DNA of 64,000 nucleotides, from positions 1-64,000 of IMG/VR virus record IMGVR_UViG_3300023174_000036. One strand, written 5' to 3'. The translations under genes and the position numbers were made by a program. Numbering within the stretch: the stretch's first letter is position 1; the number at the start of each line of letters is the position of its first letter. Below the pieces are notes generated by a model. The model saw only the letters and a list, made by a program, of their open reading frames with translations. It was not told where the DNA came from and did no database searches. Below are positions 6,066 to 39,548 of the stretch, one piece after another.

Positions 6066-6425
6066 TTATGGAGCAAAGTCACTGGCAGCTTGTGCTATAC
6101 GCCTGGCTTTAAGCTCATCTTCTTCACCAGTGTTGAGTTTCCCGCTCCATCCTGCCAAACTCAAAAACGGTACTCCCACTCTACTGGCAAAAGCACTGAG
6201 TCCATTCCAAAAGTTTGCGGCTCCATATGTGTTCACCGCATAGTTCAGCACACGCCATTGATCCACAGTCAAATAGGGTTTTAGCTGTGGGGCCGCAGTT
6301 ATAGCACCAGCGGCAACAGCACCAGTCCAATTGCCCTTGCTTATATAGTTCAGTATGGTTCGAATCAACACAGCATTTGCTGTGGCTTTTTCTGGCGCGG
6401 GCTCAGTGATTTCTTTCAGTCTCAT
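6066..6425 (-). CDS. Hypothetical late protein (MRLKEITEP...)
   Basis: Start moved to ATG 6425, 5 nt after TATAAATA (6431-6438). Confidence 0.65.
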   Translation of the reverse strand: MRLKEITEPAPEKATANAVLIRTILNYISKGNWTGAVAAGAITAAPQLKPYLTVDQWRVLNYAVNTYGAANFWNGLSAFASRVGVPFLSLAGWSGKLNTGEEDELKARRIAQAASDFAP

Positions 6426-6707
6426 ACATATATTTATAAGTATACATATGCTGATACCCATTCCGCTAGACCCCATAGCCGTAGACATCATAATAGAGCT
6501 ACTGTTGGAGTCTTTACAGTCATACGGGGCTGGGTGAGCATTAGCACTCATTTCGTGCGTTAACGCTCTGCTACTTCGTAGCTGTAAAAAATCTGCGCTT
6601 CGCGTTTGTTCTAAAATTTTGCGCTGGCGCTTCGCGATACTAAATAATCAGCGGTCCAATTAGTTTGAATCGCATAAATACACTTATAATTAAGGATATA
6701 CGATACA

Positions 6708-7025
6708 ATGAACCCGTTACCAACAACTTATACATTAGGACAGCGTACAATGAATTTTGTGGGTGCGTTGCAAAGTCTTTCTATTCACAGCAAGGAACAC
6801 CAGCACGTGGCACACCGAATTCTAGACAAGGTACATGCACCCAGATATCTTCACACGTTAACGCCAGAAGTGCTGGCCACCATGTACAGAACCATGCTGA
6901 CTGAAGCTGGACTTGATTCAGACTGTGTCACACAGTTCACTGACATTGCTGTGCAAATGAACCTGTTCCGTGATGTGGAAACACTGGATGACAATGTGAC
7001 TCCTTGGGTAGAACCACAGTCCTAA
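6708..7025 (+). CDS. Hypothetical protein
   Basis: CATAAATA 6673-6680 and AAGGA RBS. Confidence 0.65.
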   Translation: MNPLPTTYTLGQRTMNFVGALQSLSIHSKEHQHVAHRILDKVHAPRYLHTLTPEVLATMYRTMLTEAGLDSDCVTQFTDIAVQMNLFRDVETLDDNVTPWVEPQS

Positions 7026-7053
7026 AACCATGCCCGTTCCGCACGGGCATTTT
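7025..7053. terminator. Hairpin between convergent genes
   Basis: ATGCCCGT-TCCGC-ACGGGCAT followed by T residues. Confidence 0.6.
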
Positions 7054-7058
7054 CACCT

Positions 7059-7316
7059 CTAACTCCAGTGCAACAAGAACAGGGTTTTGTTGCGTTCTCG
7101 GCGGAAAGCTATACAGGCCTGCCAGTAATCCACACTGGTGCCGTTGTGATAAGCCCATTCCGAATAGTGATGTCCTATGTATTGATTCAGCCATGCTTCC
7201 ATCTCATCCACTGCTGTGACCCAATCCCATTGATCATTCACAATTATGGTGGGCCATGTGGCATAGGCAATGTGCTCAAACGGATGCAGTTCCGGAAGAT
7301 AAAAGCTTCTTGGCAT
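7059..7316 (-). CDS. Hypothetical Trp-rich protein (MPRSFYLPE...)
   Basis: Start moved to ATG 7316, 5 nt after CTAAATA. Confidence 0.65.
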   Translation of the reverse strand: MPRSFYLPELHPFEHIAYATWPTIIVNDQWDWVTAVDEMEAWLNQYIGHHYSEWAYHNGTSVDYWQACIAFRRERNKTLFLLHWS

Positions 7317-7381
7317 AAAAATATTTAGCCCATACACTAAAAAGTTAAATATCATATACACCAACAAGGATCACGTGCCGT

Positions 7382-8475: not shown

Positions 8476-8506
8476 ACATCACGTTGCCTTTGTCAAGACA
8501 GTACAA

Positions 8507-9019: not shown

Positions 9020-10507
9020 TTACACCAGGTCATCACCCGGCAAACTGTTCAACAATTCACGCAATTTGGTACTGGCCACTTCAGCTTTGATTTTAGGTTT
9101 GGCCAAGTCAAATCCTTCCTTGGGACTTGCCCGCTCCCAAGCAGTTGTGCTGCCAGCTTCTTCGCCTTGTGCAGTTTGTCTTTGCTTGATGCTGTTGAGT
9201 AGCGTTGAACCTGCACTGGCTTGCCCTGAGCCATATGAATCTTCTTGTTCGCAGTCAGTGATACGCAAACTGTCAATGTTGAACTCCAAATCAATCTTTT
9301 GTCCAACACCACTGCTACTACGTGTTTTCATCAGTTGTATTTGATAACGTCCACGTTCACGCATGGCCCTGCTGGTAAAGATACCAAACACGTTATCAGC
9401 TGTCTGGATCTTACTTAATCCGCCTGAAATATGACTGTGGTCAAATTCAATTTCTTCCACAGCTCCACGATTCAACTGCGCCGCAGTGATAAACACACAG
9501 TTCTTTTCCACTGCCAAATTGCGCAGTTCTTCCGACACATACTTGTCTTTGACAAACAAGTTTTCAGCACTGATGCGCTTGCTCAAGGGCATTAACAAGT
9601 CCATGTAGTCTACCAACAGTACATCGACCTTACGGCCCATTTTGATTTCATACTCTTTCAAATAAGCACGAATGTCATTGGCAGTCTTGCCACTGGGCAT
9701 GTATTTGACTTGAAACTGTCCCGACTTCTTGCCAATCATTTTGACTTTCATTTCAACATCGTCAATGTTCTTGAAAATCTCTCTAGTGGCCATACCAGTT
9801 ACCATGGCATCCACACGCATACTCACAAGTTCTTCACTCAACTCAAGTGTTAAGTAAATTACATTATATCCAGCAAGAGCATAGTTGACACCAAGATTAG
9901 CCAGGAATAGGGATTTACCAGCACCGCTACCGCCCGCCCAAATGTTGAGTTCGCCACGATTAAAGCCCCCAAACAACTTGTCATCAACTGCTTTCCAACC
10001 TGTAGATATTTGTCCATTTTTATCCTTAATCCTCATTAGTCTAGCACGGGGATCTTCAAAGTAGTCAGTACCCATGTCTCGTTGCAGGCCAATTTGCACA
10101 GCCGCTTTGATCTTTTCTTCCACTGGTCCATACTCACCTTTTTCCAGCAAGTCGGCTGATTCTAAAATTGCACGTTCAAGACCTTTGTGGCGGGTAAATG
10201 TTTCAAAGTCATTCATCAACCATTCAAAATGTTCTTCCCGTAATTCAGTGGCGGCTTTTAAGTTTGAACCTGTGGCCGCATTTAAAATGTCAGGTGTGGG
10301 CAACACATTGTTCTCACTCACATATTTGGTTAAGAATTCTGCTGGCTCTTGTAGTCTACGGTCAAACAGTTTGCTGTCAAAAATGCTTTGGCAACGCACA
10401 AATGTACCAGCATCTGCCAACATCATTTCCAAATAGACTTTTTGGATTTCATATCCATAGTCTACATTTTGTCTTGCTTTATCTTTGTCTTTGTTGTATT
10501 CACTCAT
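9020..10507 (-). CDS. DnaB-like replicative helicase (T4 gp41-like)
   Basis: GGSGAGKS, LTLELSEE, LLVDYMD, TAAQLNR, MKTR. Confidence 0.95.
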   Translation of the reverse strand: MSEYNKDKDKARQNVDYGYEIQKVYLEMMLADAGTFVRCQSIFDSKLFDRRLQEPAEFLTKYVSENNVLPTPDILNAATGSNLKAATELREEHFEWLMNDFETFTRHKGLERAILESADLLEKGEYGPVEEKIKAAVQIGLQRDMGTDYFEDPRARLMRIKDKNGQISTGWKAVDDKLFGGFNRGELNIWAGGSGAGKSLFLANLGVNYALAGYNVIYLTLELSEELVSMRVDAMVTGMATREIFKNIDDVEMKVKMIGKKSGQFQVKYMPSGKTANDIRAYLKEYEIKMGRKVDVLLVDYMDLLMPLSKRISAENLFVKDKYVSEELRNLAVEKNCVFITAAQLNRGAVEEIEFDHSHISGGLSKIQTADNVFGIFTSRAMRERGRYQIQLMKTRSSSGVGQKIDLEFNIDSLRITDCEQEDSYGSGQASAGSTLLNSIKQRQTAQGEEAGSTTAWERASPKEGFDLAKPKIKAEVASTKLRELLNSLPGDDLV

Positions 10508-10524
10508 ACTTTATTATACGCTCT

Positions 10525-11472
10525 TTAAATTTTAATTGCAATGTGTTTGACAGGAGCCCATCGATATTTCCACTCTCTTTGCTTGGTATGATACAGCACT
10601 GAACCAATTGCACTACTAGGATCTCCGGGATTAGGTAGGCTCCAACAGTACTTAAATCTTGGCTCTACAAACTTTTTATTAGCTGTACTATTCATAGCAC
10701 ATCCGCCCATGTAAACTAAACTATCTGTATCAATTAGTTGTTTAGCTTTGAGCATAACAGCTGATACTTGATCTTCAAACACCTGTTGTACTGCGGCCGC
10801 AATGTCGCATTGATCTTGCAAATTATTAATAGGATAGGGCCAATCTAAAACACCTCTATGTAAGTTACGGGTTAAATTAACTGTGTAATCTATATAACTT
10901 TTAACCTCGGGCAAATATCTTTTGGGGTCACCTTGTTCTGACATTTGTTGTAGCAAATATTCTTGCTTGATTGGTTCTAATCCTATCAGTTGTGTAAACG
11001 CACTATAGAATAATCCTAGACTATGTGGATAACTTCTGCTCCACACTTTTTTTATTTCACCGTGTAGCCCTTCCCAGATAGTTGCACACTCAAACTCTCC
11101 TATTGCATCGAGGACGACAATAGCACAATGATTAAAAGGACTAGTATAGTAACCGGCGGCAGCATGACTTGCATGATGCGGCGTATAAGTGATTGGTGCA
11201 TAGTGTAACCTTATATTATTTAAATATCTTTTAGGTAATACTGACAAATCCATTGCTGTTTTATATTGACCAGCATACACTTGTCTAGCTTTCTTAACCC
11301 AAGGTCTTTCATACCAAAATAATCTATCCGGAGCTCCTTGGTGCAATGCTTCGGTTATTATAGATGTATCAAACTCATCGTCTTTACAAGTAGTCCACGA
11401 AATAAGTGCGCCGTCCTTAAATACGGCTAGACTTGACCCGTGATTAAGAGCGTTTATCCCCCACTGTATCAT
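10525..11472 (-). CDS. Carbamoyltransferase N-terminal (Kae1-like) domain only
   Basis: HHASHAA, DAIGE, SLGLFYS, GGCAMN, PGDPSSAIG; no C-terminal domain. Confidence 0.8.
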   Translation of the reverse strand: MIQWGINALNHGSSLAVFKDGALISWTTCKDDEFDTSIITEALHQGAPDRLFWYERPWVKKARQVYAGQYKTAMDLSVLPKRYLNNIRLHYAPITYTPHHASHAAAGYYTSPFNHCAIVVLDAIGEFECATIWEGLHGEIKKVWSRSYPHSLGLFYSAFTQLIGLEPIKQEYLLQQMSEQGDPKRYLPEVKSYIDYTVNLTRNLHRGVLDWPYPINNLQDQCDIAAAVQQVFEDQVSAVMLKAKQLIDTDSLVYMGGCAMNSTANKKFVEPRFKYCWSLPNPGDPSSAIGSVLYHTKQREWKYRWAPVKHIAIKI

Positions 11473-11582: not shown

Positions 11583-12547
11583 TCTATCTCCTTAAACCAT
11601 TTCTTTGCTCTCAATTGTATTTTGAGACTGTTTGATTCTTTTGCCGATACAATCAAGTATAATGTAGCCAATCTTCCTAATTTTATCACAGCATCATTTA
11701 CATCTTTAACGCCTTCGGGCCAATCAGGCATACTAACTGACCAGCCGTATTCTAATGCTTGCTCCACAGTCTTAGGACCTTCGTGATCTCTGTCTGGTAC
11801 TAGTATAATTTCCTTGCTTAGTTGTTTAAGCAACCAATTCTGACTGTCCTTTATTTCTGCTCCAAGTAAAGCACATCCATCAATACTTATCGCATCAAAC
11901 GGTCCTTCACAAACAATTACGAAGTTTCGATTGTTTATTTGTCTATCTAAATTAAACACATATCCCGGTTGTTGCTCGCTAATATACTTGGGTTTAACGT
12001 CGCCTATGGCCCGGGCAGTGTATCCTACAATGACATTGTCTTTGAGGAACGGTATAATCAACCGGTTGCTAAAACCTATCTTAGGAGTCCAATAGAAAGG
12101 ATAATCTTCGAGATATAAATTTCTATTTGAAAGATACTCGAGTACAGGAACTAACTTGTCCGGGATATGGTTTAAACTGGAAATGAGTTCACTATCAGGC
12201 GGTAATTCACGTGGTTCAAACTTAGGTATAACACTACGTATTACTGTATTTGTATTGTCATTTAATCTAAGAGCTTCTAGACGTAATTGATTTATAATGT
12301 CGTCACTCATGTTGAGTAATCGCATTAACTTATTCATCTTTTGACTAATTGCTCTGCCAGGTTGCCAACTGGCTTTGAACTGGCAATTAAAACAATGATA
12401 GCTGACAGCATCACCGGCATTGACGATAAAACCGCCACGTTGGCGTTTATCATCACAGCAAGGGGCATTAAAACTTATCCAACCGCTTGGAGTTTGTTTT
12501 CGCTTACCTGGTAAGTGTTGTAATAGTGTGTCGGCTATGAGGCTCAT
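11579..12547 (-). CDS. DNA primase (T4 gp61-like)
   Basis: Zn finger PCC...HCFNC; TOPRIM VCEGPFDA, PDRD, KDVND. Confidence 0.92.
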   Translation of the reverse strand: MSLIADTLLQHLPGKRKQTPSGWISFNAPCCDDKRQRGGFIVNAGDAVSYHCFNCQFKASWQPGRAISQKMNKLMRLLNMSDDIINQLRLEALRLNDNTNTVIRSVIPKFEPRELPPDSELISSLNHIPDKLVPVLEYLSNRNLYLEDYPFYWTPKIGFSNRLIIPFLKDNVIVGYTARAIGDVKPKYISEQQPGYVFNLDRQINNRNFVIVCEGPFDAISIDGCALLGAEIKDSQNWLLKQLSKEIILVPDRDHEGPKTVEQALEYGWSVSMPDWPEGVKDVNDAVIKLGRLATLYLIVSAKESNSLKIQLRAKKWFKEIE

Positions 12548-12559
12548 AGCACATTATAC

Positions 12560-13366
12560 TTAACTTACCACTACTTTGTCAACTGTTCCGAATGCCGAAT
12601 TATAGTTTCCGTTTTTCCAAGAAACTCTAAAATAATTGTAGTTACCAATCTCAACATCATTAAATGTGATAGTTGTAGTGGTTGCAACTGTGGTAGTTAT
12701 TGTTCGAATAGGCAATGCATTTAAATAAGAATTCACTGAAATAGTGCTGTTCTCCGTTCCTTCTAAATAAATGGTTCCTTTAAAGTTAGTAACTTCAATT
12801 TCAAAATCAAGAATCTTAACAGGCTCGGCTTCGTAAAATTTTGTGGCTATTGCAGGTGTGTGGTTTGTAACATTGCCATCGAGATCTATTTCCTGTGTAA
12901 AGTGTTCATATACCCTATCATCTCGAAAAGTTGGCATAGCATCGCCGACTACTTCTATAGTGCCCACGGCACCAAATCTTGTGTCAGCGTATAACAACAC
13001 ATCATCACCCATGGTATTCATGGCAGAAACACTGTATTTTAAATATTGACTGGTCAATTCATCTAAATCGTCTTGAGGTATAACAACTTTGGCAATGCCT
13101 TTCAATGCAGTTGGAGTAACAGTGTACGGGCTATTTCCCAAAGCATTACCCTGTGCATCCATGACATTAAGTTTGATAATTGGCAGTGTTGATAAATCAA
13201 TACGCTTTTGATCGGCATTCTTTATATCAAACTCAATGGTGTTATCAATGCCATTATAAATTTTTATTGTTCTCTGATACACGTTTGTATACTCCACAGT
13301 AAATCCTGCCAAATTGGCTAATAGTATGATCCTATTAGAATATAAATAACTTGAAATTTTTTGCAT
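12560..13366 (-). CDS. Hypothetical beta-rich protein, possibly virion
   Basis: 268-aa ORF; ATAAATA at 13387-13393; AAGG RBS. Confidence 0.7.
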   Translation of the reverse strand: MQKISSYLYSNRIILLANLAGFTVEYTNVYQRTIKIYNGIDNTIEFDIKNADQKRIDLSTLPIIKLNVMDAQGNALGNSPYTVTPTALKGIAKVVIPQDDLDELTSQYLKYSVSAMNTMGDDVLLYADTRFGAVGTIEVVGDAMPTFRDDRVYEHFTQEIDLDGNVTNHTPAIATKFYEAEPVKILDFEIEVTNFKGTIYLEGTENSTISVNSYLNALPIRTITTTVATTTTITFNDVEIGNYNYFRVSWKNGNYNSAFGTVDKVVVS

Positions 13367-18380: not shown

Positions 18381-19560
18381 GATTTGCCTTCGAATCCAAT
18401 ACTGGTTTAGTGTCAGTATACGACACAACCAAGTCACAACAGTTGGCATATACCATAGATTTATTATTTCGTATAGTGTCTAACACAATCACACTCATAG
18501 GAGTCCATTTATTTTTTAATAAGAATTTAGGTATCTTATTAGCTTGAATCCCTACAACAACAGTATCGTCATCTAATTGAGCGTTGTATTTGTTACTGGA
18601 TATAAGTTGATTAAATTCTTTGCCAATGCCTTGGCTATCTAATCTAAAATATATACCAACACTGTTATTGACTTTGTTTTCTTTCAATGCTGTATCTAGC
18701 ACTTTCATATTTTTATATACTATGTCGGAATCCCAATTAGGAAATACTATTAGTATAGGAGCTCTACGTAGCTCTATCAAAGAAGATATCACTTGTTTTA
18801 AACTATAGAGTTTGCTGTCTACCCATACTTTAGATGTGTTCCTGTATGCAAGTTCTCCTGCTAATGTTCCAGGTTTTTCTTCTTTATTATCAAATGTGTA
18901 CTGATATCTAAAACTTCTATCTTTGATTATCAAATGATCAATTATTGTTTCGATGCCAAGTTCACTGGTAATACTTTTGTGAAAATTTTGATTTGAAATA
19001 TTAGAAATGTCAAACCTATCCTCGACTTCTTTTCTTTCCCAGCTTTTAATTATATTTGCGTAACTAATAATTTCTTCATCTATTTCAAATTGCAACGGAG
19101 ATAATAGATCAACTAACAACATAATATTTTGTTCAGTTAATGTTGCTGTGTATCCTTTGGCAGGATGTACTTGTACAAACCCTTCTATCTTATTGGCATT
19201 GGTTTGTAATAATTTTCTTATGTTAGCCGAATATGAAAAATTAATACTCAATAACACATCACCATCAACAGTCTTAGATAGTTGTAATTTTTTATATTCT
19301 TCGACTTGTCTAAAAGAACGTGTCCATACAGGATCAACTAGTAAATCGGACATATCGTGCCAAACTGTTTGTAACGATAGTATATGTTCCTTAAATAATT
19401 TTAATATCAATTTAGATTGATTTTCGGTAATAAAATAATGAGAATTTACAGATGTTGCAAGACTACGCAATACTCTGCTATCTCTAGCAGACATTAAGTC
19501 TTCTACAGTGGGATTAGTATTATTTACAATGTCTAGTAATAGCTCGTCTATAGTTATCAT
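18370..19560 (-). CDS. Hypothetical protein
   Basis: Long ORF; start at ATG 19560 after TTGACA-16-TATAAT. Confidence 0.75.
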   Translation of the reverse strand: MITIDELLLDIVNNTNPTVEDLMSARDSRVLRSLATSVNSHYFITENQSKLILKLFKEHILSLQTVWHDMSDLLVDPVWTRSFRQVEEYKKLQLSKTVDGDVLLSINFSYSANIRKLLQTNANKIEGFVQVHPAKGYTATLTEQNIMLLVDLLSPLQFEIDEEIISYANIIKSWERKEVEDRFDISNISNQNFHKSITSELGIETIIDHLIIKDRSFRYQYTFDNKEEKPGTLAGELAYRNTSKVWVDSKLYSLKQVISSLIELRRAPILIVFPNWDSDIVYKNMKVLDTALKENKVNNSVGIYFRLDSQGIGKEFNQLISSNKYNAQLDDDTVVVGIQANKIPKFLLKNKWTPMSVIVLDTIRNNKSMVYANCCDLVVSYTDTKPVLDSKANHGS

Positions 19561-19607
19561 ATGAATTATTATAACACACTTTTGTTGTTTGTCAAAGAAA
19601 ATAGACA

Positions 19608-19640
19608 AAAAAATAGGCCTCAATATTATTTAAGGCCTAT
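19608..19640 (-). terminator. Intrinsic terminator
   Basis: ATAGGCCT/AGGCCTAT stem followed by T-tract on minus strand. Confidence 0.7.
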
Positions 19641-19663
19641 CGGACACCTTTTGGTGGAATTAG

Positions 19664-26798: not shown

Positions 26799-26805
26799 GA
26801 TATAT

Positions 26806-28404
26806 TTATCCTATGCCTGAGGAAATGAATATAGGCAATGGTGCGTCCCATTCTTCGCCAAATTCTGTGTTTACACTTAGGGTTTCAAATACCCGAGGAT
26901 CCCAATCTGCCAGCACCACGCTCATGCGGATTATCAGCAATAATGCACTTACCAAGTCATCATTTTGCCCAGATTTGGCTTTGAAACTGGTACCCGATGC
27001 AACAAAACTCTTTAGTTCACTGATTAGTCCTTTGCTGAGAATCCGCATTTTGTTTCCTTCAATAAGGAATTTTAATCGGGCACACGCTGATATTTTGTTA
27101 CCAAAGGTAGTGTTAAATCCCTTACGGAATTTCCTTACATGACCTTTCTTTACTGGCTCGCTGACAAACAATCCAGGAAATGTATCCTCGCCCATGTCTT
27201 TAATAACTACCAGAGCCGCTTCGCCTAGCGTGTTGTTTTCACAAGACCAGTAAATGCTGTTGGGATAACCTGGACCAATCTTTTCTTCTAAATTCTTTAG
27301 TATATCTCTAAATATTTTCACTTGATCTTGCACAATGGTCAAGTTATGTTGCCATTCTGCTACTTGGGTAAAACTGGGTAATTCAAACACTTGTATTGCC
27401 GCATAATCTCCGCCTGTGCCCAAACTAGGGTCTAATGCCGCCAAATACAAGTTTCCGCCTACTGGCTGTTTGTACCATCTAACTTGTCCCATTTTTTCAA
27501 CAGGATCTCGGCCCAGCAACTCTGCCAGTTTTAATGAACTGATTAAGGTTTCATCATATACTAAAAATTCGCAACCGTACTCACGCCGGAATCGCTCTTC
27601 TCCAATACGTCCCAGTTCTACACGTTTCCATTCATCGTCTCGATCTGGATGCTCATTCCATTCTGCACGGAATCCGTGGAATCCATTACGCCCTAATCCG
27701 TCTGTACGTACATCGCCATATTCGTCAAATGTGTCCTGACTCTCTTTCCAAATGATGGCAAATTCGTCTTCGTCACTGTTGGGCGTTGAAGTGATAATTG
27801 CTCGACCACCAGTTGCTAGTGTCGGGGAAATTGAAGTCCAAAACTCAGTGGCGATATTTGGCTGTACGAAAGCAAACTCATCGCAATATAGTAAGGATAT
27901 GGACATACCACGACCGGTATTACCAGTAGTAGTAGCTGATACAATTCTTGAGCCGTTGTCAAAGTCTATACTCCCTTTGTTGTAGCTGACCACACCACAT
28001 CGGATATGGTCAGCACATAGTTCGTATCCATAGCGGATACGTTGCATAATTTCCTGTGCACCTGTGTATTTGTGTGCGGCAACTAGAATAGTCTGATCTG
28101 GATGAAACATTGCAAACCATAACAGGTAACTGGAGGCGCATGTTGTTTTACCACTCTGACGCGGTAGCATGTTAATGTTGAATCGAAAATCGTGATAACT
28201 GTGTAATAGCCGCTCTTGATATTCAAACGGCTGGAACAACATCTTGCCTTTGACGGGATGTTGTATGTGAAAATGATTGCGAGAAAAATGCAAGTAGCCG
28301 TTGGTTGGATCTGAGCAAGCTAATAAATCTACAACTTGATCTTCCGTGAATTTTTCTCGGGTATGTGCTTTCTTGGTGATTACACCATCTAAACTTTTTG
28401 CCAT
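26806..28404 (-). CDS. Terminase large subunit (gp17-like)
   Basis: PRQSGKTT, LYCDEFAF, TSTPN, DPSLGTGGD, DDLV. Confidence 0.95.
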   Translation of the reverse strand: MAKSLDGVITKKAHTREKFTEDQVVDLLACSDPTNGYLHFSRNHFHIQHPVKGKMLFQPFEYQERLLHSYHDFRFNINMLPRQSGKTTCASSYLLWFAMFHPDQTILVAAHKYTGAQEIMQRIRYGYELCADHIRCGVVSYNKGSIDFDNGSRIVSATTTGNTGRGMSISLLYCDEFAFVQPNIATEFWTSISPTLATGGRAIITSTPNSDEDEFAIIWKESQDTFDEYGDVRTDGLGRNGFHGFRAEWNEHPDRDDEWKRVELGRIGEERFRREYGCEFLVYDETLISSLKLAELLGRDPVEKMGQVRWYKQPVGGNLYLAALDPSLGTGGDYAAIQVFELPSFTQVAEWQHNLTIVQDQVKIFRDILKNLEEKIGPGYPNSIYWSCENNTLGEAALVVIKDMGEDTFPGLFVSEPVKKGHVRKFRKGFNTTFGNKISACARLKFLIEGNKMRILSKGLISELKSFVASGTSFKAKSGQNDDLVSALLLIIRMSVVLADWDPRVFETLSVNTEFGEEWDAPLPIFISSGIG

Positions 28405-28416
28405 ACATTATTTACA

Positions 28417-28444
28417 TAAAAAAAGCCACCCGCAGGTAGCTTTT
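28417..28444 (-). terminator. Intrinsic terminator
   Basis: AAAAGCCACC-CGCA-GGTAGCTTTT with A-tract. Confidence 0.7.
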
Positions 28445-28466
28445 GATATTTTGATTAGGATACTGT

Positions 28467-29267: not shown

Positions 29268-29268
29268 G

Positions 29269-29856
29269 TTATTTTCCTCCTATTGGACTTTTACTTCCAG
29301 TAGCTTTTGTTTTTGATTGCTTAGGTTGTTTTTCAACAGGAACTTTTTTAGCCAGTAACGTATCGTTAACACCTTTAACTTGTTCTAATTCTTTTTTAGT
29401 TTTAGTTAATTCTTTAAGAAAGTTTTCTTTCTTTTTCTCGCCTACTAGATCTTGATTATTGCTGTTTTCGTATTCGTCAGCAAGAACTGATTTTCCAGAT
29501 TTAGTAGCATATTGATTATTGATAGCAAGCTCTTCTTCTTCTTTAATATTGCGTACACGAACATCATGTGCAGACTTATGTAATTTTTCTGCTAACAAAG
29601 TAGCAACTTGCAAACTAGTTGCAGGATAGCTGGTAGTCACATCAAACACCGTTACACCAATATTTTTATGGTTAGGAAAATCTGCTGGAGATTCTTGTAT
29701 TGGAGTGCTTTTACCTGCACTGCAAGATTCCACTTGAAATTGTCCCAAAGCAGATTTAATAATTGCGGCGCAGTCCTTTGGACAATCACCTGCAATTTTA
29801 ACTTTAAATTCGTAGACTCGTTTGCTTTCTACTAGATACTGTGTAAATGATTTCAT
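29269..29856 (-). CDS. Hypothetical head-associated protein
   Basis: N-terminus MKSFTQYLVES resembles T4 capsid-targeting sequence; ATAAATA 29875-29881. Confidence 0.7.
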   Translation of the reverse strand: MKSFTQYLVESKRVYEFKVKIAGDCPKDCAAIIKSALGQFQVESCSAGKSTPIQESPADFPNHKNIGVTVFDVTTSYPATSLQVATLLAEKLHKSAHDVRVRNIKEEEELAINNQYATKSGKSVLADEYENSNNQDLVGEKKKENFLKELTKTKKELEQVKGVNDTLLAKKVPVEKQPKQSKTKATGSKSPIGGK

Positions 29857-29877
29857 TGTATATTCCTGATAATGTAT

Positions 29878-30357
29878 TTATTTCATATTGCGTAGTTTTT
29901 CCAATAGACTATTGCGATCTGCTACTATAAAGCCGTCACCGGGTATACTGACACTGTTGTCTTCTTGGACTGAATCATTATCTAACTTTTGTTTCTTGAG
30001 TTGTAACTCAATCATTTTGAGTTTTTTGTCAATTTTAGCGGCTTTAGCGTCAATGGCATTTTTAAGCATACCGCCAGCAACTTCAAAAATACGTCCGCTG
30101 TAGCGAGCTTCTACATTCATGCCTAGGTCCATCAAATCGTCATACGCATCCGTAGCACGTTGCGCTAATGCATCAAACTCAGCATCGCTAGCATCGCCTA
30201 ACCCTTTAACTGCGGGCAATGCCGCTGAGATTTTGTCAAATTCGCTCATGTCGCGAAGGAACGGTTGTGCGACTTCAGCTTTGGCTTTTTTCTTTTCTTC
30301 TTCCGTGACCAGCTTTTTGCTTTCAGGAAGGTTTAAAATTTCTTCAAGTTTCTTCAT
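29878..30357 (-). CDS. Probable terminase small subunit (gp16-like)
   Basis: Helical; RIFEVAGGMLKNA resembles the gp16 RxxEV motif; size and context. Confidence 0.6.
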   Translation of the reverse strand: MKKLEEILNLPESKKLVTEEEKKKAKAEVAQPFLRDMSEFDKISAALPAVKGLGDASDAEFDALAQRATDAYDDLMDLGMNVEARYSGRIFEVAGGMLKNAIDAKAAKIDKKLKMIELQLKKQKLDNDSVQEDNSVSIPGDGFIVADRNSLLEKLRNMK

Positions 30358-30365
30358 ATTATTAC

Positions 30366-30803
30366 TTATGCAGTGCCGGTATGAAACAGATCATTTTCGT
30401 TGAGTATACGAAACTTGATACCCTGTTGTTTACACCATAAATTGGCGGCACTCCATTTGGCTTGATTCTTAATAAACTGCGCTTGATTGTATTTGTTTTT
30501 GCCCACACGCTCAATAATTTGCTGACTGGATGGTTTAATTTCAATCAGCTCAACAATCATTTTGCTGTTTTTATCTACATACTGAATAAAAAAATCCGGT
30601 ACATATACTGTTTGGCGGCCAGTTAGCGGGTCTCTATATGGTATTTGTATGGCTTCACTTGCCCATTTTTGTACACTTTTGTTGTTGTCGCAAAAATTCA
30701 TGAAACTCCATTCCCAACTAGATCTATATGTAGGAACTTTGTTTCCTACATATTTTTCTGGGTGTTTCATTACAAATTTTCCGCGAGCAAATTTGGATGC
30801 CAT
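30366..30803 (-). CDS. Head completion nuclease (T4 gp4-like, TnsA fold)
   Basis: YRSSWE, WASE..IPY, YVPDF, EIKP, NQAKWSAA. Confidence 0.9.
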   Translation of the reverse strand: MASKFARGKFVMKHPEKYVGNKVPTYRSSWEWSFMNFCDNNKSVQKWASEAIQIPYRDPLTGRQTVYVPDFFIQYVDKNSKMIVELIEIKPSSQQIIERVGKNKYNQAQFIKNQAKWSAANLWCKQQGIKFRILNENDLFHTGTA

Positions 30804-30804
30804 A

Positions 30805-31167: not shown

Positions 31168-31170
31168 ATA

Positions 31171-32166
31171 TTATCCTAGATTAACTTTTTTAGCTTCAGT
31201 TGCTGTTGACTCGGCTGTTTTAACTGGGAATGTTATTCCTTGTATACCGCCAATAGTTTGTGTTGAATTTGTAGATAATAATCCTGGAGTACCTTGCAGT
31301 GCTTTTTCCTGAGTGTTTTGATAAGTGTTAACCGACTCAACAATGTTGTTTAATGTTTCTGCACTGTTTCTGGTAACATTTTGTTGTGATACAAAACTTG
31401 GACTTAGGCTATTAGAGTCAACAACTCCTTCTAATGGACTAGGGGTAACGTCGTAGTGTTCTAAACCAAACCCTTCTACTGTTTCTGGACTAACAGTTCC
31501 TGCGCCATATGATACTGCTTCAAATGAAATAGTCATTGTATTATCATGAACCTTAGTGCTGGAATAATCTAACCCTGCATGATCCCAGCTGGCAATTAAC
31601 GGATTATGTAATTTGTAACTTACAAATTCATGTCGAGCCATTTGATAAATTGTTATATGGTTAAAAAATGGAATATTGCTACCGTTATCTAAACCAAATG
31701 GCGTGGTAATAAAATCAAAATTCTTAGTTGCATTTCTGTTATAAGCAGTTCCATTTTTTGCACTAGTTGGATCTGCATAGTAATAACTGTAATAGTTTTG
31801 CCACAATTGATTGATTAAACCCATGTTATCGTCATGAAATTTAATTGTTGCATTTTCAAACTTATGTTGCATCTGTATTACTTTTTTTCTGTTATATTGA
31901 TTAGCAGTCTCTGACGATATAGTAAATTTAGGTAACGATATACTTTTGACCAGCATATTAATTTCGTTTCTATGTCGTTGTAATAAGTCAATACTTTTTA
32001 ATGCGCCGGGATTTATACTAAAAGATACATGAAATAAATGATCAAACTTTGGAGCAAGTCTAAATGAATCGTCTGCAAATAGTCTGCTTGCGTGACGTTG
32101 ATCCCGCAAGTAAACATGACTTGTAGGACTATGTGATTTTAAATATTTGCTAGGTGTAAAGGCCAT
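31171..32166 (-). CDS. Tail tube-like / baseplate-tube junction protein
   Basis: VKSISLPKF...NQYNRK...IKFHDD; follows tube gene. Confidence 0.65.
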   Translation of the reverse strand: MAFTPSKYLKSHSPTSHVYLRDQRHASRLFADDSFRLAPKFDHLFHVSFSINPGALKSIDLLQRHRNEINMLVKSISLPKFTISSETANQYNRKKVIQMQHKFENATIKFHDDNMGLINQLWQNYYSYYYADPTSAKNGTAYNRNATKNFDFITTPFGLDNGSNIPFFNHITIYQMARHEFVSYKLHNPLIASWDHAGLDYSSTKVHDNTMTISFEAVSYGAGTVSPETVEGFGLEHYDVTPSPLEGVVDSNSLSPSFVSQQNVTRNSAETLNNIVESVNTYQNTQEKALQGTPGLLSTNSTQTIGGIQGITFPVKTAESTATEAKKVNLG

Positions 32167-32185
32167 AATAATATTTATCTTAAAT

Positions 32186-32203
32186 ATTAACTACGTAGTT
32201 AAT
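32186..32203. promoter_or_regulatory. Perfect 18-bp palindrome, putative operator
   Basis: ATTAACTACGTAGTTAAT next to late promoter; 13-bp copy at 51081-51093. Confidence 0.55.
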
Positions 32204-32214
32204 GACTAGTCACT

Positions 32215-32240
32215 AAAAAACCCGCTGAGCGGGTTTTTTT
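32215..32240. terminator. Intrinsic terminator after tail tube gene
   Basis: AAAAAACCCGC-TGA-GCGGGTTTTTTT. Confidence 0.85.
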
Positions 32241-32250
32241 AATTTGTTGA

Positions 32251-32895: not shown

Positions 32896-32911
32896 TGTGT
32901 TCTCCTAATTA

Positions 32912-36181: not shown

Positions 36182-36285
36182 TTTTTAATCTCCATGAGTA
36201 CATGTTCTTCAATGTATTTAGTGGATTTTGGATTTTTATCCTTGTTATTAGCTAGAAAAAGGTTTTGAAAAGGTGTAAATAAAGT

Positions 36286-36612
36286 ATGAGACCACTTTGT
36301 ACTTGCGGAATTAAACCTGCGGCTGTTAACTATAAAAAAAATGGGCGTACTTATTATAGGAGCCAGTGTGAATCTTGTCTCGCTGGTAAAGGCGTTGCTA
36401 GATGGTATCGTTCAGGATATCGTATGAAAAATACTTGCGATAAATGCGGGTTTAAAAGCCTGCATAAAGAAGTATTTGCAGTGTTCCACGTAGATGGAGA
36501 TTTAAATAATTGCAGGCCGCTTAATCTTAAGACAGTGTGTGCAAATTGTCAGCGTGTTCTTCACAAAGAAGGTCAGAAGTGGAAGCAAGGTGATCTTGTA
36601 CCAGATCTTTGA
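36286..36612 (+). CDS. HNH-like zinc-binding protein
   Basis: CDKCGF...HVDGDLNN...NLKTVCANC; GTAAATA 4 nt before ATG. Confidence 0.75.
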   Translation: MRPLCTCGIKPAAVNYKKNGRTYYRSQCESCLAGKGVARWYRSGYRMKNTCDKCGFKSLHKEVFAVFHVDGDLNNCRPLNLKTVCANCQRVLHKEGQKWKQGDLVPDL

Positions 36613-37225
36613 CTCTGGCAAACAAGTCATCTATACTGCCATTGTTATCAAGTACTGCATCAAATCTAGTTCCAACCCATGCAGTTTCGCTGGCATGAAT
36701 TCCTAATTTTTCAAGTTTGCTACGGCTAGTGGACCAAGAAAAATTACCAGTTTCTCCCTTGTTGGCATTAACAGCATCGTCGTACCATTCAGGTTCCGGA
36801 CCACGATGAACCCGTATTACAATACCGCCAGCGTCTTTAATACTTTTGATTTCATTAGGAAATCTGCAATCGCTGATAACGATGTCGTCTTTGCTGTTAC
36901 GGAGTTTGTTTTCAAGACTAGCAATCCATATGTCATCGTGAAAGCTCTTACGGCACACTTCAGTGCCCCAGTATTGTAGTACCCAGCGAGGTGTTAGGTT
37001 AGGCATATCAAGTCGTTGAGCCCACCATGGGTCTACTTGTTCGCGCCATTCACGTGCTTGTTTTGTGCGTCCTTCAAGCATTGTTCTATCCCAGCCAAAC
37101 ACATGAGCTACCGCGTCTTTTAAGGAGTTAGCAAATGATTCTCGTCGGAAGCCATGGAAGTTAGTAAGATAATCAGCAACTGTATCTTTGCCAGAACCAA
37201 TAAACCCGCATACACCTATAATCAT
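36527..37225 (-). CDS. Deoxynucleoside monophosphate kinase (T4 gp1-like)
   Basis: GFIGSGKDT, FANSLKD, PRWVLQYWGTE, DCRFPNE, HASE; TTGACC-17-TATACT upstream. Confidence 0.92.
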   Translation of the reverse strand: MIIGVCGFIGSGKDTVADYLTNFHGFRRESFANSLKDAVAHVFGWDRTMLEGRTKQAREWREQVDPWWAQRLDMPNLTPRWVLQYWGTEVCRKSFHDDIWIASLENKLRNSKDDIVISDCRFPNEIKSIKDAGGIVIRVHRGPEPEWYDDAVNANKGETGNFSWSTSRSKLEKLGIHASETAWVGTRFDAVLDNNGSIDDLFARVKDLVQDHLASTSDLLCEEHADNLHTLS

Positions 37226-37282
37226 AGCGTCTCCTAATGTAACGCTAGTATATAACAGATTTATTACAAGGTCAAATATTTT

Positions 37283-38071
37283 TTAACCAATTACAAAAGT
37301 ATAACCCGTGCCGCCCGCAACATAGGTTTCTAGTTCTTTATCCAGTTCTTTTAATTCGGTAGTACCTGCACTAATTAAATCTTTACCGTTTAGCTGAATG
37401 CCGCCCGAACCTGGGCCAGCAATGGTGCCAAACTTGCTACGAGCTTCGCCCAGCATGATTTTACAGTTGGCAAGCGAATAATCCTTCAACCACTGTTTAG
37501 CATAAATGTCTTGTAGTAAAACCCAGTCGGGTCGAAAATTTTGGCTCTTGATTAAAATTTGTTCGCCTTGAGCAAACGGTCGTTGAAGAATATTTAAAAT
37601 ATGACTGGTTGGTTTCCAATTGAATTCAATGAATGCACCAAACATACGACCAGCTAGTTTTTGATATCCTGCAAACATTTCATATGTGGCCAAGCCGCCC
37701 ATAGACGACCCGGTTAACAAATAAGTGTTGGTATAGGCCAAATTAAACGGTTCAAACAAAGTTCCGCCTGCGCCCATGCCAGTACGCGAACCGATAGCTC
37801 TACGGAACACACTTTGTACACTGATAATTTCGTCAGGCAGTCTATATTCGTTTACATCCTGTTGTAGTTCTAAAAAACTGTAGCTTTCTTCAACAGCATT
37901 TGGACTACGTTGTCTATATCGGTTCATAGCACGATCTAGCGCAGTTTCATAGTGGATTGGATCTAGCTCTACTTCGATCATTCCATCGCCCAGCATGGCT
38001 TTAACGTATTCAAATACTTTGTTTCGCTCTATTATCGATGATGATGTATTAGTTGGGGCTTTATCGTCCAT
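37283..38071 (-). CDS. Neck protein (gp13-like)
   Basis: LGDGMIEVELD, WLKDY..A..K..LG..RSKF..GGIQLNG. Confidence 0.85.
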   Translation of the reverse strand: MDDKAPTNTSSSIIERNKVFEYVKAMLGDGMIEVELDPIHYETALDRAMNRYRQRSPNAVEESYSFLELQQDVNEYRLPDEIISVQSVFRRAIGSRTGMGAGGTLFEPFNLAYTNTYLLTGSSMGGLATYEMFAGYQKLAGRMFGAFIEFNWKPTSHILNILQRPFAQGEQILIKSQNFRPDWVLLQDIYAKQWLKDYSLANCKIMLGEARSKFGTIAGPGSGGIQLNGKDLISAGTTELKELDKELETYVAGGTGYTFVIG

Positions 38072-38086
38072 TTTAGTTCTCCACTC

Positions 38087-38108
38087 ATATTTATCTAACG
38101 ATAAATAT
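38087..38108. promoter_or_regulatory. Back-to-back divergent late promoters
   Basis: ATATTTATC-TAAC-GATAAATAT palindrome between gp13- and gp14-like genes. Confidence 0.7.
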
Positions 38109-38111
38109 CAT

Positions 38112-39548
38112 ATGCCAAGACTATCCCTATACAAACCCGAACGTGGGCAAGATTTTAAGTTTATGGACCGACAAATATCTGAAATGTTTCAGGTTGGCGG
38201 TACTGACGTATATTTGCACAAATACATGGGTCCAAAGCTAAATGCCAACGGCACTGCCGATCAGCCTGTTATTGACTCATATAATGTAGCAAATATACAA
38301 GATTTGTTATTTTTAGAAAATCGTGATAGGAAGTATGACGAAGAAATTTATCGCATCAGGGGATGGTATAATGTTGCAAACATTGACTTTAATCTAAGTC
38401 AGTTTGGATTTTTCATTGATAATGATTCCATTTTTATGACAGTGCATATTAATGATTTTATCAAATATATTGGTCGAAAACCTATTGCAGGAGATGTATT
38501 TGAGCTGCCGCATTTGCGTGACGAATTTGCATTAAACGATTACGATATCAGTTTACCGCGTTACTATGTTATTGAAGATGTGGGCCGTGCCAGTGAAGGT
38601 TTTAGTGCAACATGGTATCCGCATTTGTATAGACTCAAGTGCAAAAAAATTGTGGATAGTCAACAATTTGCTGACATACTCAATAAACCAGCAACAGATG
38701 CCAACGGTGATCCAAGTGGTTTAACACTGAGAGAATTACTCAGCACCCACAGTAAAGAATTAGAAATCAATGATCAAATAGTTGCACAGGCAGAGGCCGA
38801 CGCTCCAAAAAGCGGATACGAAACTAGACAATTTTATACACTAGCTGTGAATGAAACCGGCAAGCCCGTGCTGTCAACAGCAGATGCTGGCAACATTGAT
38901 GCCAGCAATGCATCCAATATACGTGCAAGTAGTCAAGATGGCGTTCCTGATAGAACGGGTTACACTGGATATCTTGTAGGCGACGGGTTTCCTGTCAACG
39001 GTCTTGATTTTGGATTTGGTATACAGTTTCCTGCCACAGCCATGCAAGATGATTTCTTTTTACGCACTGACTTTTTACCTAATAGATTGTTTAGATTTGA
39101 CGGTTCTCGATGGGTCAAAGTTGAAGATGCTGTACGCATGAACATGACCAATAACGATTCAAGAAATACACAAAAGACTGGATTCATCAACAACAACAGT
39201 TACATGTATACTGATAAAGTTATTGAAGATGCGGTTACATTGACTAAGGGTACCAGTGTAATCAACACTACAATTGATTTTGCAAGAACTGCTCCTTACA
39301 TTGTTTTAAAGATAGACACATATACTATGGAATATGCTATCGCAGATTATCCAACCATGCTTACTTCTTACAGTTACACTAGTCCGTTGGGTGTAGTGTC
39401 TAACAAGATTAGAATTACATTGCCTGTTGTGGGATCTGTACAACAAACTGTTCCTTACGATGGTGTGTGGACTGCAACATTGTACAATGTAAGAATGGCG
39501 CAAAAACAAAGCCTTAGCAAGGCGCTTAGACCTAGGGCAGATTTATAA
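38112..39548 (+). CDS. Neck/head-closure protein (gp14-like), extended
   Basis: DLLFLENRDRKY, LSQFG, PIAGDVFELP; start moved to ATG 38112. Confidence 0.7.
   Translation: MPRLSLYKPERGQDFKFMDRQISEMFQVGGTDVYLHKYMGPKLNANGTADQPVIDSYNVANIQDLLFLENRDRKYDEEIYRIRGWYNVANIDFNLSQFGFFIDNDSIFMTVHINDFIKYIGRKPIAGDVFELPHLRDEFALNDYDISLPRYYVIEDVGRASEGFSATWYPHLYRLKCKKIVDSQQFADILNKPATDANGDPSGLTLRELLSTHSKELEINDQIVAQAEADAPKSGYETRQFYTLAVNETGKPVLSTADAGNIDASNASNIRASSQDGVPDRTGYTGYLVGDGFPVNGLDFGFGIQFPATAMQDDFFLRTDFLPNRLFRFDGSRWVKVEDAVRMNMTNNDSRNTQKTGFINNNSYMYTDKVIEDAVTLTKGTSVINTTIDFARTAPYIVLKIDTYTMEYAIADYPTMLTSYSYTSPLGVVSNKIRITLPVVGSVQQTVPYDGVWTATLYNVRMAQKQSLSKALRPRADL

What the first reader, a model, noticed from the sequence alone, without database searches (positions are those of the whole stretch)
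6425..38114. Widespread apparent leaderless mRNAs: promoter box 4-5 nt before ATG with no Shine-Dalgarno
Seen: a TAAATA box (T4 late-promoter-like; T4 consensus TATAAATA) lies 4-5 nt before the ATG at 6425, 7316, 26798, 28404 (terminase), 32166, 36286 and 38112. The variant TAAGTA does so at 30357 and 6448. Helicase (10507; TTGCAA-17-TATAAT-5-ATG) and primase (12547; TTGACA-18-TATAAT-5-ATG) show the same geometry with sigma70 boxes. None has room for an RBS after the box. Inference: transcription starts at or next to the ATG, so many replication and late genes are translated SD-independently. This would complement an RBS-targeted shut-off of early genes and form a translational early-to-late switch.
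Basis: partly seen in the sequence, partly recalled or inferred. Interest (0 to 1): 0.62.

Follow-up and report, generated by a model that had tools for sequence, protein, structure and literature searches.

The report
Leaderless late genes in jumbo phage
In this 356-kb freshwater jumbo phage and its uncultivated relatives, about a third of the T4-style late promoter boxes and a few host-type promoters sit 4-7 bases before the ATG with no ribosome-binding site; the layout is conserved and very probably gives leaderless mRNAs, but no transcript 5' end has been mapped.

Summary
All 11 quoted sequences are at their coordinates, and 10 are true gene starts; 6448 opens only 29 codons.

- **Enrichment.** Genome-wide, TAAATA-N4/5-ATG opens 25 ORFs of at least 50 aa, against about 1 per other spacing (Poisson p 6e-20).
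- **No Shine-Dalgarno.** These starts lack an SD, use ATG only, and have a pyrimidine at -1.
- **Two classes.** A second class of 49 TAAATA boxes lies 15-32 nt upstream, mostly with an SD. Almost nothing lies between the two classes.
- **Sigma factor.** The phage encodes a gp55-like late sigma.
- **Conservation.** In 40-80 related metagenomic contigs per gene, box and spacing are invariant while the spacer sequence drifts. terL always has a covarying terminator, then TAAATA, then 4-5 nt, then ATG.
- **Orthologue switching.** Orthologues switch between a leadered (SD) and an ATG-abutting layout of the same promoter.
- **Host-type promoters.** Primase keeps TTGACA-17/18-TATAAT-5/6-ATG down to 46% identity.
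- **Cultured kin.** T4, PA5oct and five cultured relatives show no such enrichment.

Leaderless mRNAs are the best explanation (about 0.7), but no transcription start was mapped because only contigs were available. The proposed early-to-late translational switch is not supported: most late promoters keep SD leaders, sigma70-type genes are leaderless too, and no RegB or RegA homologue was found.

The parts
28402..28414 (-). TAAATA-N4-ATG at the start of the large terminase gene (26806-28404)
   Evidence: Box, 4-5 nt spacing and ATG are invariant in 47 distinct upstream sequences from 79 related loci, while the spacer sequence varies.
28421..28444 (-). Intrinsic terminator (hairpin plus T-run) ending 2-4 nt before the terL TAAATA box
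   Evidence: All 47 relatives fold to a perfect hairpin (mean dG -14.3, z -4.6) with 20 different 5' arms, which shows compensatory change.
26796..26808 (-). TAAATA-N4-ATG at the start of an 897-aa virion protein gene; the TAA is the terL stop codon
   Evidence: ATAAATA-N4-ATG is invariant in 75 loci. Cultured relatives have ATAAATA, about 20-28 nt, an SD, then ATG.
30355..30368 (-). Variant box TAAGTA-N5-ATG at the start of a 159-aa small-terminase-like gene
   Evidence: ATAAGTA-N4/5-ATG is conserved in about 60 loci.
32164..32177 (-). TAAATA-N5-ATG at the start of the tail tube gene (31171-32166)
   Evidence: Conserved at N4-5 in nearly all of 49 loci. Terminator 32215-32239 lies upstream.
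36276..36288 (+). TAAATA-N4-ATG at the start of an HNH endonuclease gene
   Evidence: TAAATA-N4/5-ATG is present in 38 of 39 homologous loci; one has TAAGTA.
38102..38114 (+). TAAATA-N4-ATG at the start of a 478-aa virion structural protein gene
   Evidence: Conserved in 78 loci at N4-7.
38069..38093 (-). Divergent partner: TAAATA-N16 with a GGAG SD, then ATG 38071 (leadered class), back to back with the 38102 box
   Evidence: Conserved in 71 loci.
7314..7327 (-). TAAATA-N5-ATG at the start of an 85-aa gene
   Evidence: The homologue in L091 begins at this Met. L084 has TAAATA-N5-ATG; L091 does not.
6423..6436 (-). TAAATA-N5-ATG at the start of a 119-aa gene
   Evidence: The homologue in L084 starts at the same Met but lacks the box.
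10505..10541 (-). Sigma70-type TTGCAA-17-TATAAT-N5-ATG at the DnaB-like helicase gene
   Evidence: TATAAT-N5-ATG is kept in close kin. Distant kin have TTGAC-N17-TATAAT, about 25 nt with an AAGGA SD, then ATG.
12545..12582 (-). Sigma70-type TTGACA-18-TATAAT-N5-ATG at the primase gene
   Evidence: A 12/12 consensus match. TTGAC-17/18-TATAAT-5/6-ATG is conserved in most of about 70 loci, down to 46% protein identity.
19558..19641 (-).
   Evidence: No PHROG match.
29854..29880 (-). Example of the leadered class: TAAATA-N18 with an AGGA SD, then ATG 29856
   Evidence: ATAAATA-N17/18 with an SD-like AGGA/GGGA (weak in a few loci) is conserved in 69 loci.
6437..6450 (+). TAAGTA-N5-ATG at 6448: rejected as a gene start
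   Evidence: It opens a 29-codon frame only and has no homologue. It is the opposite strand of the stretch just upstream of the 6425 box.

Best explanation
The window is the first 64 kb of a jumbo phage distantly related to the PA5oct and Rak2-like phages. The phage uses host RNA polymerase with a phage gp55-like late sigma that recognises a minimal -10-type box, (A)TAAATA, without a -35 element. In about a third of the genes served by this box the leader has been reduced to nothing. The box ends 4-6 nt before the ATG, so the A of the start codon falls at or within 1-2 nt of the predicted start site. In T4 the box is at -13 to -6, which makes N5 equal to +1. The resulting mRNA begins with AUG, carries no SD, and would be translated by the leaderless pathway, in which a 5'-terminal AUG is bound directly by the ribosome. 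A handful of consensus sigma70 promoters (primase, helicase, the 19560 ORF and a few others) are built the same way, with TATAAT-N5-7-ATG. Shown here: the motif geometry, its enrichment, the absence of an SD, the gp55 homologue, the upstream terminators, deep conservation, and orthologues that switch between leadered and ATG-abutting layouts. Inferred: the position of the transcription start and the mode of translation.
For: 1. Enrichment and specificity. 25 long ORFs start at N4/5, against about 1 per other spacing, and only with ATG.
2. Bimodal spacing. In the first-start gene set there are 21 genes at 3-7 nt, 2 at 8-16 nt, and 45 at 17-30 nt, most of the latter with an SD. This is what a promoter that needs either no leader or a leader long enough for an SD would give.
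3. One element in both classes. Both classes share A at -12 (17/27 and 35/49) and a pyrimidine just after the box.
4. Start-site context. The base before the ATG is a pyrimidine in 23 of 27 cases, against 83 of 186 SD-led genes (p 6e-5). This is the usual pyrimidine(-1), purine(+1) start-site context.
5. SD strength is at or below random.
6. A gp55-like sigma is encoded. gp55 reads A-12, A-9 and A-8 of TATAAATA.
7. terL layout. A terminator hairpin with 20 different compensating stems and a T-run ends 2-4 nt before the box in all 47 distinct relatives. The only room for a promoter is therefore the box itself. Terminators also precede 32166 and 19560.
8. Conservation. Box and spacing are conserved while the spacer sequence drifts at 26798, 28404, 30357, 32166, 36286, 38112 and 12547.
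9. Orthologue switching. g13366 is ATAAATA-N20 with an SD in close kin and ATAAATA-N4/5-ATG in distant kin. Helicase is TATAAT-N5-ATG here and TATAAT plus an SD leader elsewhere. The g26798 orthologue is leadered in the four cultured relatives that carry the box there.
10. Coding starts at the ATG. In terL, MAKSLDG is conserved with TCA/AGT serine codon switches.
11. Stop-codon overlap is not the cause. The TAA of the box is an upstream stop codon in only 4 of 27 cases.
Against: - No 5' end has been mapped. The only RNA data were assembled contigs of a freshwater metatranscriptome. These span the junctions, including one contig at 28173-28920 across the terL terminator and start. They cannot show starts and may contain DNA.
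- N4 is the commonest spacing. It puts the A one base closer to the box than the canonical T4 +1, so initiation there needs a start site 5 nt after the box, or a 1-2 nt leader in other cases.
- No gp45-type clamp was detected, and gp33 was not sought. The late machinery is therefore not shown to work as in T4.
- The host is unknown, so its capacity for leaderless translation is unknown.
- At 6425 and 7316 the box is not conserved in all relatives.
Confidence: 0.7

Rival explanations
1. The boxes are real late promoters, but the abutting gene is translated mainly from longer read-through or polycistronic transcripts. Translation would then occur by termination-reinitiation or 70S scanning. The closeness of box and ATG would simply reflect genome compaction.
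For: Metatranscriptome contigs bridge every junction, including the terL terminator. At 26798 the TAA of the box is the terL stop codon, 7 nt before the ATG, which is a layout fit for coupling. Other genes in the same operons clearly use overlap coupling, with TAATG or ATGA.
Against: Only 4 of 27 boxes overlap an upstream stop codon. terL, 32166 and 19560 are preceded by strong, conserved terminators. Compaction does not explain the fixed N4-5 spacing, the empty 8-16 nt zone, the pyrimidine at -1, or the ATG-only rule. Contigs may derive from DNA.
Confidence: 0.13
2. UAAAUA acts in the mRNA, not as a promoter. It would be an A/U-rich translation enhancer, or the operator of a translational regulator or processing nuclease, placed 4-5 nt before the AUG. 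Phage-encoded bS21 or IF-1 might be involved.
For: The phage encodes bS21 and IF-1. A/U-rich upstream sequences can support SD-independent initiation (general knowledge).
Against: The same box lies 15-32 nt upstream of 49 other genes, most of which have ordinary SDs. It matches the T4 late box read by gp55, and a gp55 homologue is present. In terL it directly follows a terminator. The parallel sigma70-type cases (TTGACA-17-TATAAT-N5-ATG) cannot be RNA signals. bS21 is also present in PA5oct and a Vibrio phage that lack the geometry.
Confidence: 0.05
3. Leaderless late and replication mRNAs would form a translational early-to-late switch that complements a shut-off aimed at the ribosome-binding sites of early genes.
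For: There is precedent. Thermus phage phiYS40 makes mostly leaderless middle and late mRNAs and shifts host IF2 and IF3 levels. This phage has an IF-1 gene coupled by an ATGA overlap to a 56-aa ORF with TAAATA-N5-ATG. IF-1 is also present in the two relatives with the strongest enrichment.
Against: 49 of 76 TAAATA-associated genes keep leaders, mostly with an SD. Sigma70-type, presumably earlier, genes are leaderless too. No RegB or RegA homologue was found. IF-1 also occurs in phage Phosso, which lacks the enrichment.
Confidence: 0.1
4. The pattern is chance in an AT-rich genome, or the start codons are mis-called.
For: The genome is 60% A+T. 6448 and 53444 are such chance or internal hits.
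Against: Poisson p 6e-20. Control hexamers and the reversed pattern show no spike. T4, PA5oct and five cultured relatives show none. The layout is conserved across 40-80 loci per gene.
Confidence: 0.01

Closest known systems
T4 late promoters (TATAAATA at -13 to -6, read by gp55 with gp33 and the gp45 clamp)
   Same: Same core box, with A-12 favoured. No -35 element. A gp55 homologue is encoded.
   Different: Only TAAATA is invariant, and T-13 is not conserved. No gp45-type clamp was detected. T4 itself shows no enrichment of box-N4/5-ATG: 10 matches against 12 in the control, and almost none open real ORFs.
Predicted ATAAATA late promoter of Rak2-like jumbo phages (CBB, GAP32; PMC5259590)
   Same: Same motif upstream of structural genes and a gp55-like sigma. 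gp33 and gp45 were also not found there.
   Different: In cultured relatives (PA5oct, Serratia BF, XbC2, Munch, Phosso, Vibrio 2.275.O) the box lies about 20-30 nt upstream with an SD, and there is no N4/5 enrichment. The ATG-abutting layout was not mentioned in the passages of the two genome papers that I read.
Thermus phages phiYS40 and Lalka27a: mostly leaderless transcripts with mapped 5' ends
   Same: A large lytic phage in which many transcripts begin at the start codon. The -10-type element abuts the ORF.
   Different: There the transcripts were mapped experimentally, cover most of them, and occur in a host phylum where -10 boxes next to ORFs are common. Here only about 8% of genes are involved, the promoter is of the T4 gp55 type, SD-led genes predominate, and nothing has been mapped.
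Lambda PRM-cI leaderless mRNA
   Same: A sigma70 -10 element a few nt before the ATG, and translation of a 5'-terminal AUG (PMC10491246). This is closest to the primase and helicase sites here.
   Different: That is a single regulatory gene in a temperate phage. Here replication genes are involved, and the primase layout is conserved across a wide phage clade.

Membership tests
T4-type (gp55-dependent) late promoter | 8-bp TATAAATA box about one helical turn upstream of the start site | tested here: inconclusive
   TAAATA is invariant, and A at the -12 position occurs in 63-71% of sites. The -13 T is not conserved. TAAGTA is a conserved variant at one gene.
T4-type (gp55-dependent) late promoter | No conserved -35 element | tested here: met
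   There is no positional conservation upstream of -12. In terL the upstream DNA is a terminator whose sequence varies.
T4-type (gp55-dependent) late promoter | Phage encodes a gp55 homologue | tested here: met
   phrog_12791 E 1.9e-73 and phrog_234 E 1.2e-24. The only PDB match is T4 gp55 (7d7c_F, E 6e-6).
T4-type (gp55-dependent) late promoter | gp45 sliding clamp as activator | tested here: not met
   No match to phrog_223 or PF02916. There is only a sub-threshold PF00712 hit (14 bits). A diverged clamp cannot be excluded.
T4-type (gp55-dependent) late promoter | gp33 co-activator | not tested
   No search was run. It was reported absent in the related phage CBB.
Leaderless mRNA | Primary 5' end at, or within a few nt of, the start codon | not testable with these tools
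   Only assembled contigs of the RNA runs were available. They show no ends.
Leaderless mRNA | No Shine-Dalgarno sequence, and no room for one | tested here: met
   There are 4-6 nt between box and ATG. Mean anti-SD dG is +0.15 kcal/mol, and 5% of sites reach -4 or below.
Leaderless mRNA | AUG start codon | tested here: met
   The spike at N4/5 exists for ATG only (25 cases). GTG gives 0-1 and TTG gives 0. Power is limited because non-ATG starts are rare anyway.
Leaderless mRNA | The ATG is the real translation start | tested here: met
   Protein conservation begins at the ATG, and the upstream sequence is non-coding or holds stop codons. PHROG profiles align from residues 1-5. No proteomic proof.
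phiYS40-type temporal switch to leaderless translation | Late or middle transcripts leaderless as a class, early ones leadered | tested here: not met
   49 of 76 TAAATA genes are leadered. Sigma70-type promoters also include leaderless cases.
phiYS40-type temporal switch to leaderless translation | Infection changes initiation-factor balance | not testable with these tools
   The phage encodes IF-1 and bS21 but no IF3 C-terminal domain. Their effect is unknown.

The most novel reading that the evidence does not exclude
A whole clade of uncultivated freshwater and marine jumbo phages has converted about a third of its gp55-type late promoters into leaderless start sites by deleting the leader. 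The clade also carries its own IF-1, which is itself the second gene of a leaderless-type late operon, and bS21. Together these would retune host ribosomes late in infection so that SD-less phage messages are favoured. That would be a phage-encoded version of the phiYS40 translational takeover.
Probability: 0.15. Interest if true: 0.75.

Novelty: new variant of a known kind. Interest (0 to 1): 0.55.

Why it matters
**Known background.** Leaderless mRNAs in phages are known from lambda cI and from Thermus phages. T4-type late promoters are known to be minimal.

**What is new here.**
- The two are fused. A gp55-type box is placed so that the start codon is the start site.
- The layout is kept under selection across a large clade of environmental jumbo phages.
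- It is absent from T4 and from all seven cultured relatives tested.

**If confirmed, it would:**
- add a class of phage transcripts that standard annotation, which relies on RBS-based start calling, mishandles;
- give a natural series of orthologues with and without leaders for studying how leaders are lost;
- provide minimal promoter-plus-start modules of about 15 bp;
- raise the question of what phage-encoded IF-1 and bS21 do.

It matters little for the early-to-late switch idea, which the data do not support.

Tried and rejected
- **RNA evidence.** There were no 5' ends, and contigs bridge the junctions, so the result is inconclusive.
- **RegB and RegA of T4.** Neither has a homologue in the genome. 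These were single-sequence searches, so the negative is weak.
- **Clamp.** phrog_223, PF02916 and PF00712 gave nothing significant.
- **6448 (TAAGTA, + strand).** It opens a 29-codon frame with no homologue and was rejected.
- **53444, 83685, 133600 and 322728.** These are internal or doubtful N4 hits counted in the 27. Removing them does not change the result.
- **Structure counting.** The count of structure pairs on alignment A1 was not run because MAFFT put hairpins of different register in different columns. Each sequence was folded separately instead.
- **Stop-codon overlap.** It was tested as the cause of the box and applies to only 4 of 27 sites.
- **IF-1 and bS21 against geometry.** bS21 does not correlate with the layout. 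IF-1 correlates only loosely.
- **Papers.** The phiYS40 primary paper (PMC1885378) is not held and is cited through a review and a preprint. Searches found no paper linking T4-type late promoters to leaderless mRNAs. The library is incomplete.
- **Not used.** The large protein searches, structure prediction and complex prediction were not needed.

Full report
**What the window is**

The window is the first 64 kb of a single 356,312-bp virus record (IMG/VR, 96% complete, 39.9% G+C). Its large terminase is 53% identical to that of Pseudomonas phage PA5oct and 41-50% identical to those of Rak2-like and other jumbo phages. No phage record matches at the DNA level. Gene functions at the sites in question:
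- DnaB-like helicase (10507)
- primase (12547)
- 897-aa virion protein (26798)
- large terminase (28404)
- small-terminase-like protein (30357)
- tail tube (32166)
- HNH endonuclease (36286)
- virion structural protein (38112)

**Check of the observation**

Every quoted sequence is present at its coordinate. In the whole genome there are 272 TAAATA hexamers on both strands.
- Counting every downstream ATG by distance gives 15 at N4 and 13 at N5, against 2-8 elsewhere.
- Restricting to ATGs that open at least 50 codons gives 14 and 11, against a mean of 0.93 for the other distances from 0 to 16. Poisson p = 5.7e-20.
- At N4/5, 25 of 28 ATGs open long ORFs. At other distances 15 of 67 do (Fisher p 1.2e-9).
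- Nine other A/T-rich hexamers show no spike.
- The reversed pattern occurs 12 times against 28.
- The spike exists for ATG only.
- The TAA of the box is the stop codon of an upstream gene in only 4 of 27 cases.

6425 and 7316 are real starts. Homologues begin at exactly those methionines, and one has stop codons upstream. 6448 opens 29 codons with no homologue and is dropped.

**Two classes of the same box**

- Anchored on first-start ORFs, the distance from box to start is bimodal: 21 genes at 3-7 nt, 2 at 8-16 nt, and 45 at 17-30 nt.
- A stricter list gives 27 ATG-proximal and 49 leadered genes.
- Leadered genes mostly have ordinary SDs, with mean anti-SD dG of -5.0 kcal/mol and 68% at or below -4.
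- Proximal genes have none, with mean dG of +0.15 and 5% at or below -4. The random median is -1.5.
- Both classes prefer A just before the box (17/27 and 35/49) and a pyrimidine just after it (21/27 and 35/49). They are therefore one element, (A)TAAATA-Y.
- The base before the ATG is a pyrimidine in 23 of 27 proximal genes, against 83 of 186 SD-led genes (p 6e-5). This is the usual context of a start site.

**What reads the box**

- The genome encodes a 277-aa protein (G000:C1:94261-95094, minus strand) that matches 'sigma factor for late transcription' (phrog_12791, E 1.9e-73) and T4 gp55 (phrog_234, E 1.2e-24).
- Its only match in the PDB is gp55 of the T4 late transcription complex.
- In T4 the box TATAAATA occupies -13 to -6, and gp55 flips out A-12, A-9 and A-8. 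N5 therefore puts the A of ATG at +1, and N4 puts it one base closer.
- An ATAAATA late promoter and a gp55-like sigma, without gp33 or gp45, were already predicted for the Rak2-like phages CBB and GAP32.
- I likewise found no gp45-type clamp.

**Conservation in relatives**

Three scans of IMG/VR gave 80 loci each around terL, the helicase and the 38112 gene.

terL:
- All 47 distinct upstream sequences read hairpin, T-run, 2-4 nt, TAAATA, 4-5 nt, ATG.
- The box, the ATG and the T-run are the invariant columns, and mean column identity is 74%.
- Every hairpin folds perfectly (mean -14.3 kcal/mol, z -4.6) with 20 different 5' arms. It is therefore a selected terminator.
- Upstream transcription is thus ended a few bases before the box, and the only room for a promoter is the box itself.

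Other sites:

| Site | Layout | Conserved in |
|---|---|---|
| 26798 | ATAAATA-N4-ATG | 75 loci |
| 30357 | variant ATAAGTA-N4/5-ATG | about 60 loci |
| 32166 | ATAAATA-N4/5-ATG | nearly all of 49 loci |
| 36286 | TAAATA-N4/5-ATG | 38 of 39 loci |
| 38112 | TAAATA-N4-7-ATG | 78 loci |
| 38071 (divergent neighbour of 38112) | TAAATA-N16/17 with GGAG | 71 loci |

Spacer sequences drift; spacer lengths do not.

**Orthologues switch layout**

- The gene at 13366 has ATAAATA-N20 with an SD here and in close kin, but ATAAATA-N4/5-ATG in distant kin.
- The helicase has TATAAT-N5-ATG here and in close kin, but TTGAC-17-TATAAT followed by a leader of about 25 nt with AAGGA in distant kin.
- The 26798 orthologue of four cultured relatives (Phosso, Serratia BF, XbC2, Munch) has the box, about 20-28 nt and an SD. 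The Vibrio phage's copy has the box about 17 nt upstream without a clear SD.
- The primase keeps TTGAC-17/18-TATAAT-5/6-ATG in most of about 70 loci, down to 46% protein identity.
- The consensus scan rates it 12/12. It also finds a third such site: terminator, TTGACA-16-TATAAT-N7-ATG at 19560.
- These switches are hard to explain unless the boxes are promoters and the choice is between an SD leader and no leader.

**Distribution among phages**

The pattern TAAATA-N4/5-ATG, counted against its reversed control:

| Genome | Pattern | Control |
|---|---|---|
| This genome | 28 | 12 |
| G001 (large metagenomic relative) | 29 | 10 |
| G002 | 30 | 8 |
| G004 | 18 | 10 |
| G005 | 22 | 12 |
| G003 | 12 | 16 |
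| T4 | 10 | 12 |
| PA5oct | 20 | 30 |

- In T4 the matches open essentially no real ORFs, and in PA5oct one or two do.
- Phosso, Vibrio phage 2.275.O, Serratia BF and XbC2 show no excess, and Munch (12 against 16 in the control) falls short of it.
- The layout is therefore a derived trait of an uncultivated, mostly freshwater clade.

**RNA data**

One freshwater metatranscriptome holds this sequence at 100% identity, but only as assembled contigs.
- The contigs cover 26600-26857 in part and 27829-32400 almost without a gap.
- They bridge the junctions, including 28173-28920 across the terL terminator and start.
- They cannot show ends and may include DNA.
- The transcription start therefore remains inferred.

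- Leaderless geometry is a minority among late promoters (27 of 76).
- It also occurs at consensus sigma70 promoters of replication genes, so it does not separate temporal classes.
- No RegB or RegA homologue was found.
- The nearest precedent for a leaderless late programme is in Thermus phages phiYS40 and Lalka27a, where 5' ends were mapped. Their host phylum commonly has -10 boxes next to ORFs.
- One lead remains. The phage encodes IF-1 and ribosomal protein bS21. IF-1 is coupled by an ATGA overlap to a 56-aa ORF with TAAATA-N5-ATG.
- IF-1 is present in G001 and G002 but also in Phosso. bS21 is also present in phages without the geometry.
- This is a hint, not evidence.

**Verdict**

Leaderless transcription and translation is the best-supported mechanism, at about 0.7. 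The translational switch is unsupported. I judge this a new variant of known things: a gp55-type promoter fused to the start codon, conserved across a clade. I found no report of it in the papers held.

Noticed in passing
G000:C1:233984-234175 (-) and 234193-234363 (-), outside the window (L215): The phage encodes translation initiation factor IF-1 (PF01176, 75.7 bits). It is overlapped by ATGA with an upstream 56-aa ORF that itself has TAAATA-N5-ATG. IF-1 is also present in relatives G001 and G002 and in Sinorhizobium phage Phosso.
   Followed up: partly
G000:C1:294442-294597 (-), outside the window (L214): The phage encodes ribosomal protein bS21 (PF01165, 66.9 bits) with an ordinary GAGGA SD. 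bS21 is also present in G001, G002, G004, PA5oct, Phosso and Vibrio phage 2.275.O, so it does not track the leaderless geometry.
   Followed up: partly
window 32187-32202: A perfect 16-bp palindrome, TTAACTACGTAGTTAA, lies between the terminator (32215-32239) and the TAAATA box of the tail tube gene. It is conserved in relatives. A 2-mismatch copy at 51077-51092 follows another TAAATA box. This may be a regulator site.
   Followed up: partly
window about 36240-36275 and homologues in L217-L296: HNH endonuclease genes carry a conserved tandem GAAAAGG...AAAAGG element just upstream of their TAAATA-N4/5-ATG. The mobile gene therefore seems to travel with its own minimal late promoter.
   Followed up: no
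G000:C1:267792 (-) and 267835 (+): A divergent gene pair (630 aa and 223 aa) is separated by 42 bp. Both genes have the ATG-abutting layout, TAAGTA-N5-ATG and TAAATA-N4-ATG.
   Followed up: no
G000:C1:272004 (-): A 185-aa gene with TAAATA-N4-ATG starts 3 nt after what looks like the 3' end of a tRNA gene (...GGTTCGAATC...CGCCA). The tRNA was not checked with ARAGORN.
   Followed up: no
window 26600-32400: An identical sequence is present in a 2015 freshwater metatranscriptome (run X1). Contig depth is uneven: about 16 over the structural genes at 29245-32400 and 2.5-3.4 inside terL. This suggests real transcripts and lower terL expression downstream of the terminator, but contig depth is a poor measure.
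   Followed up: partly
window 30366-31167 and 39548: Neighbouring genes in the same clusters use neither an SD nor a box. They use stop-start overlaps (TAATG or ATGA), conserved in relatives. Three initiation modes therefore coexist in one operon.
   Followed up: no
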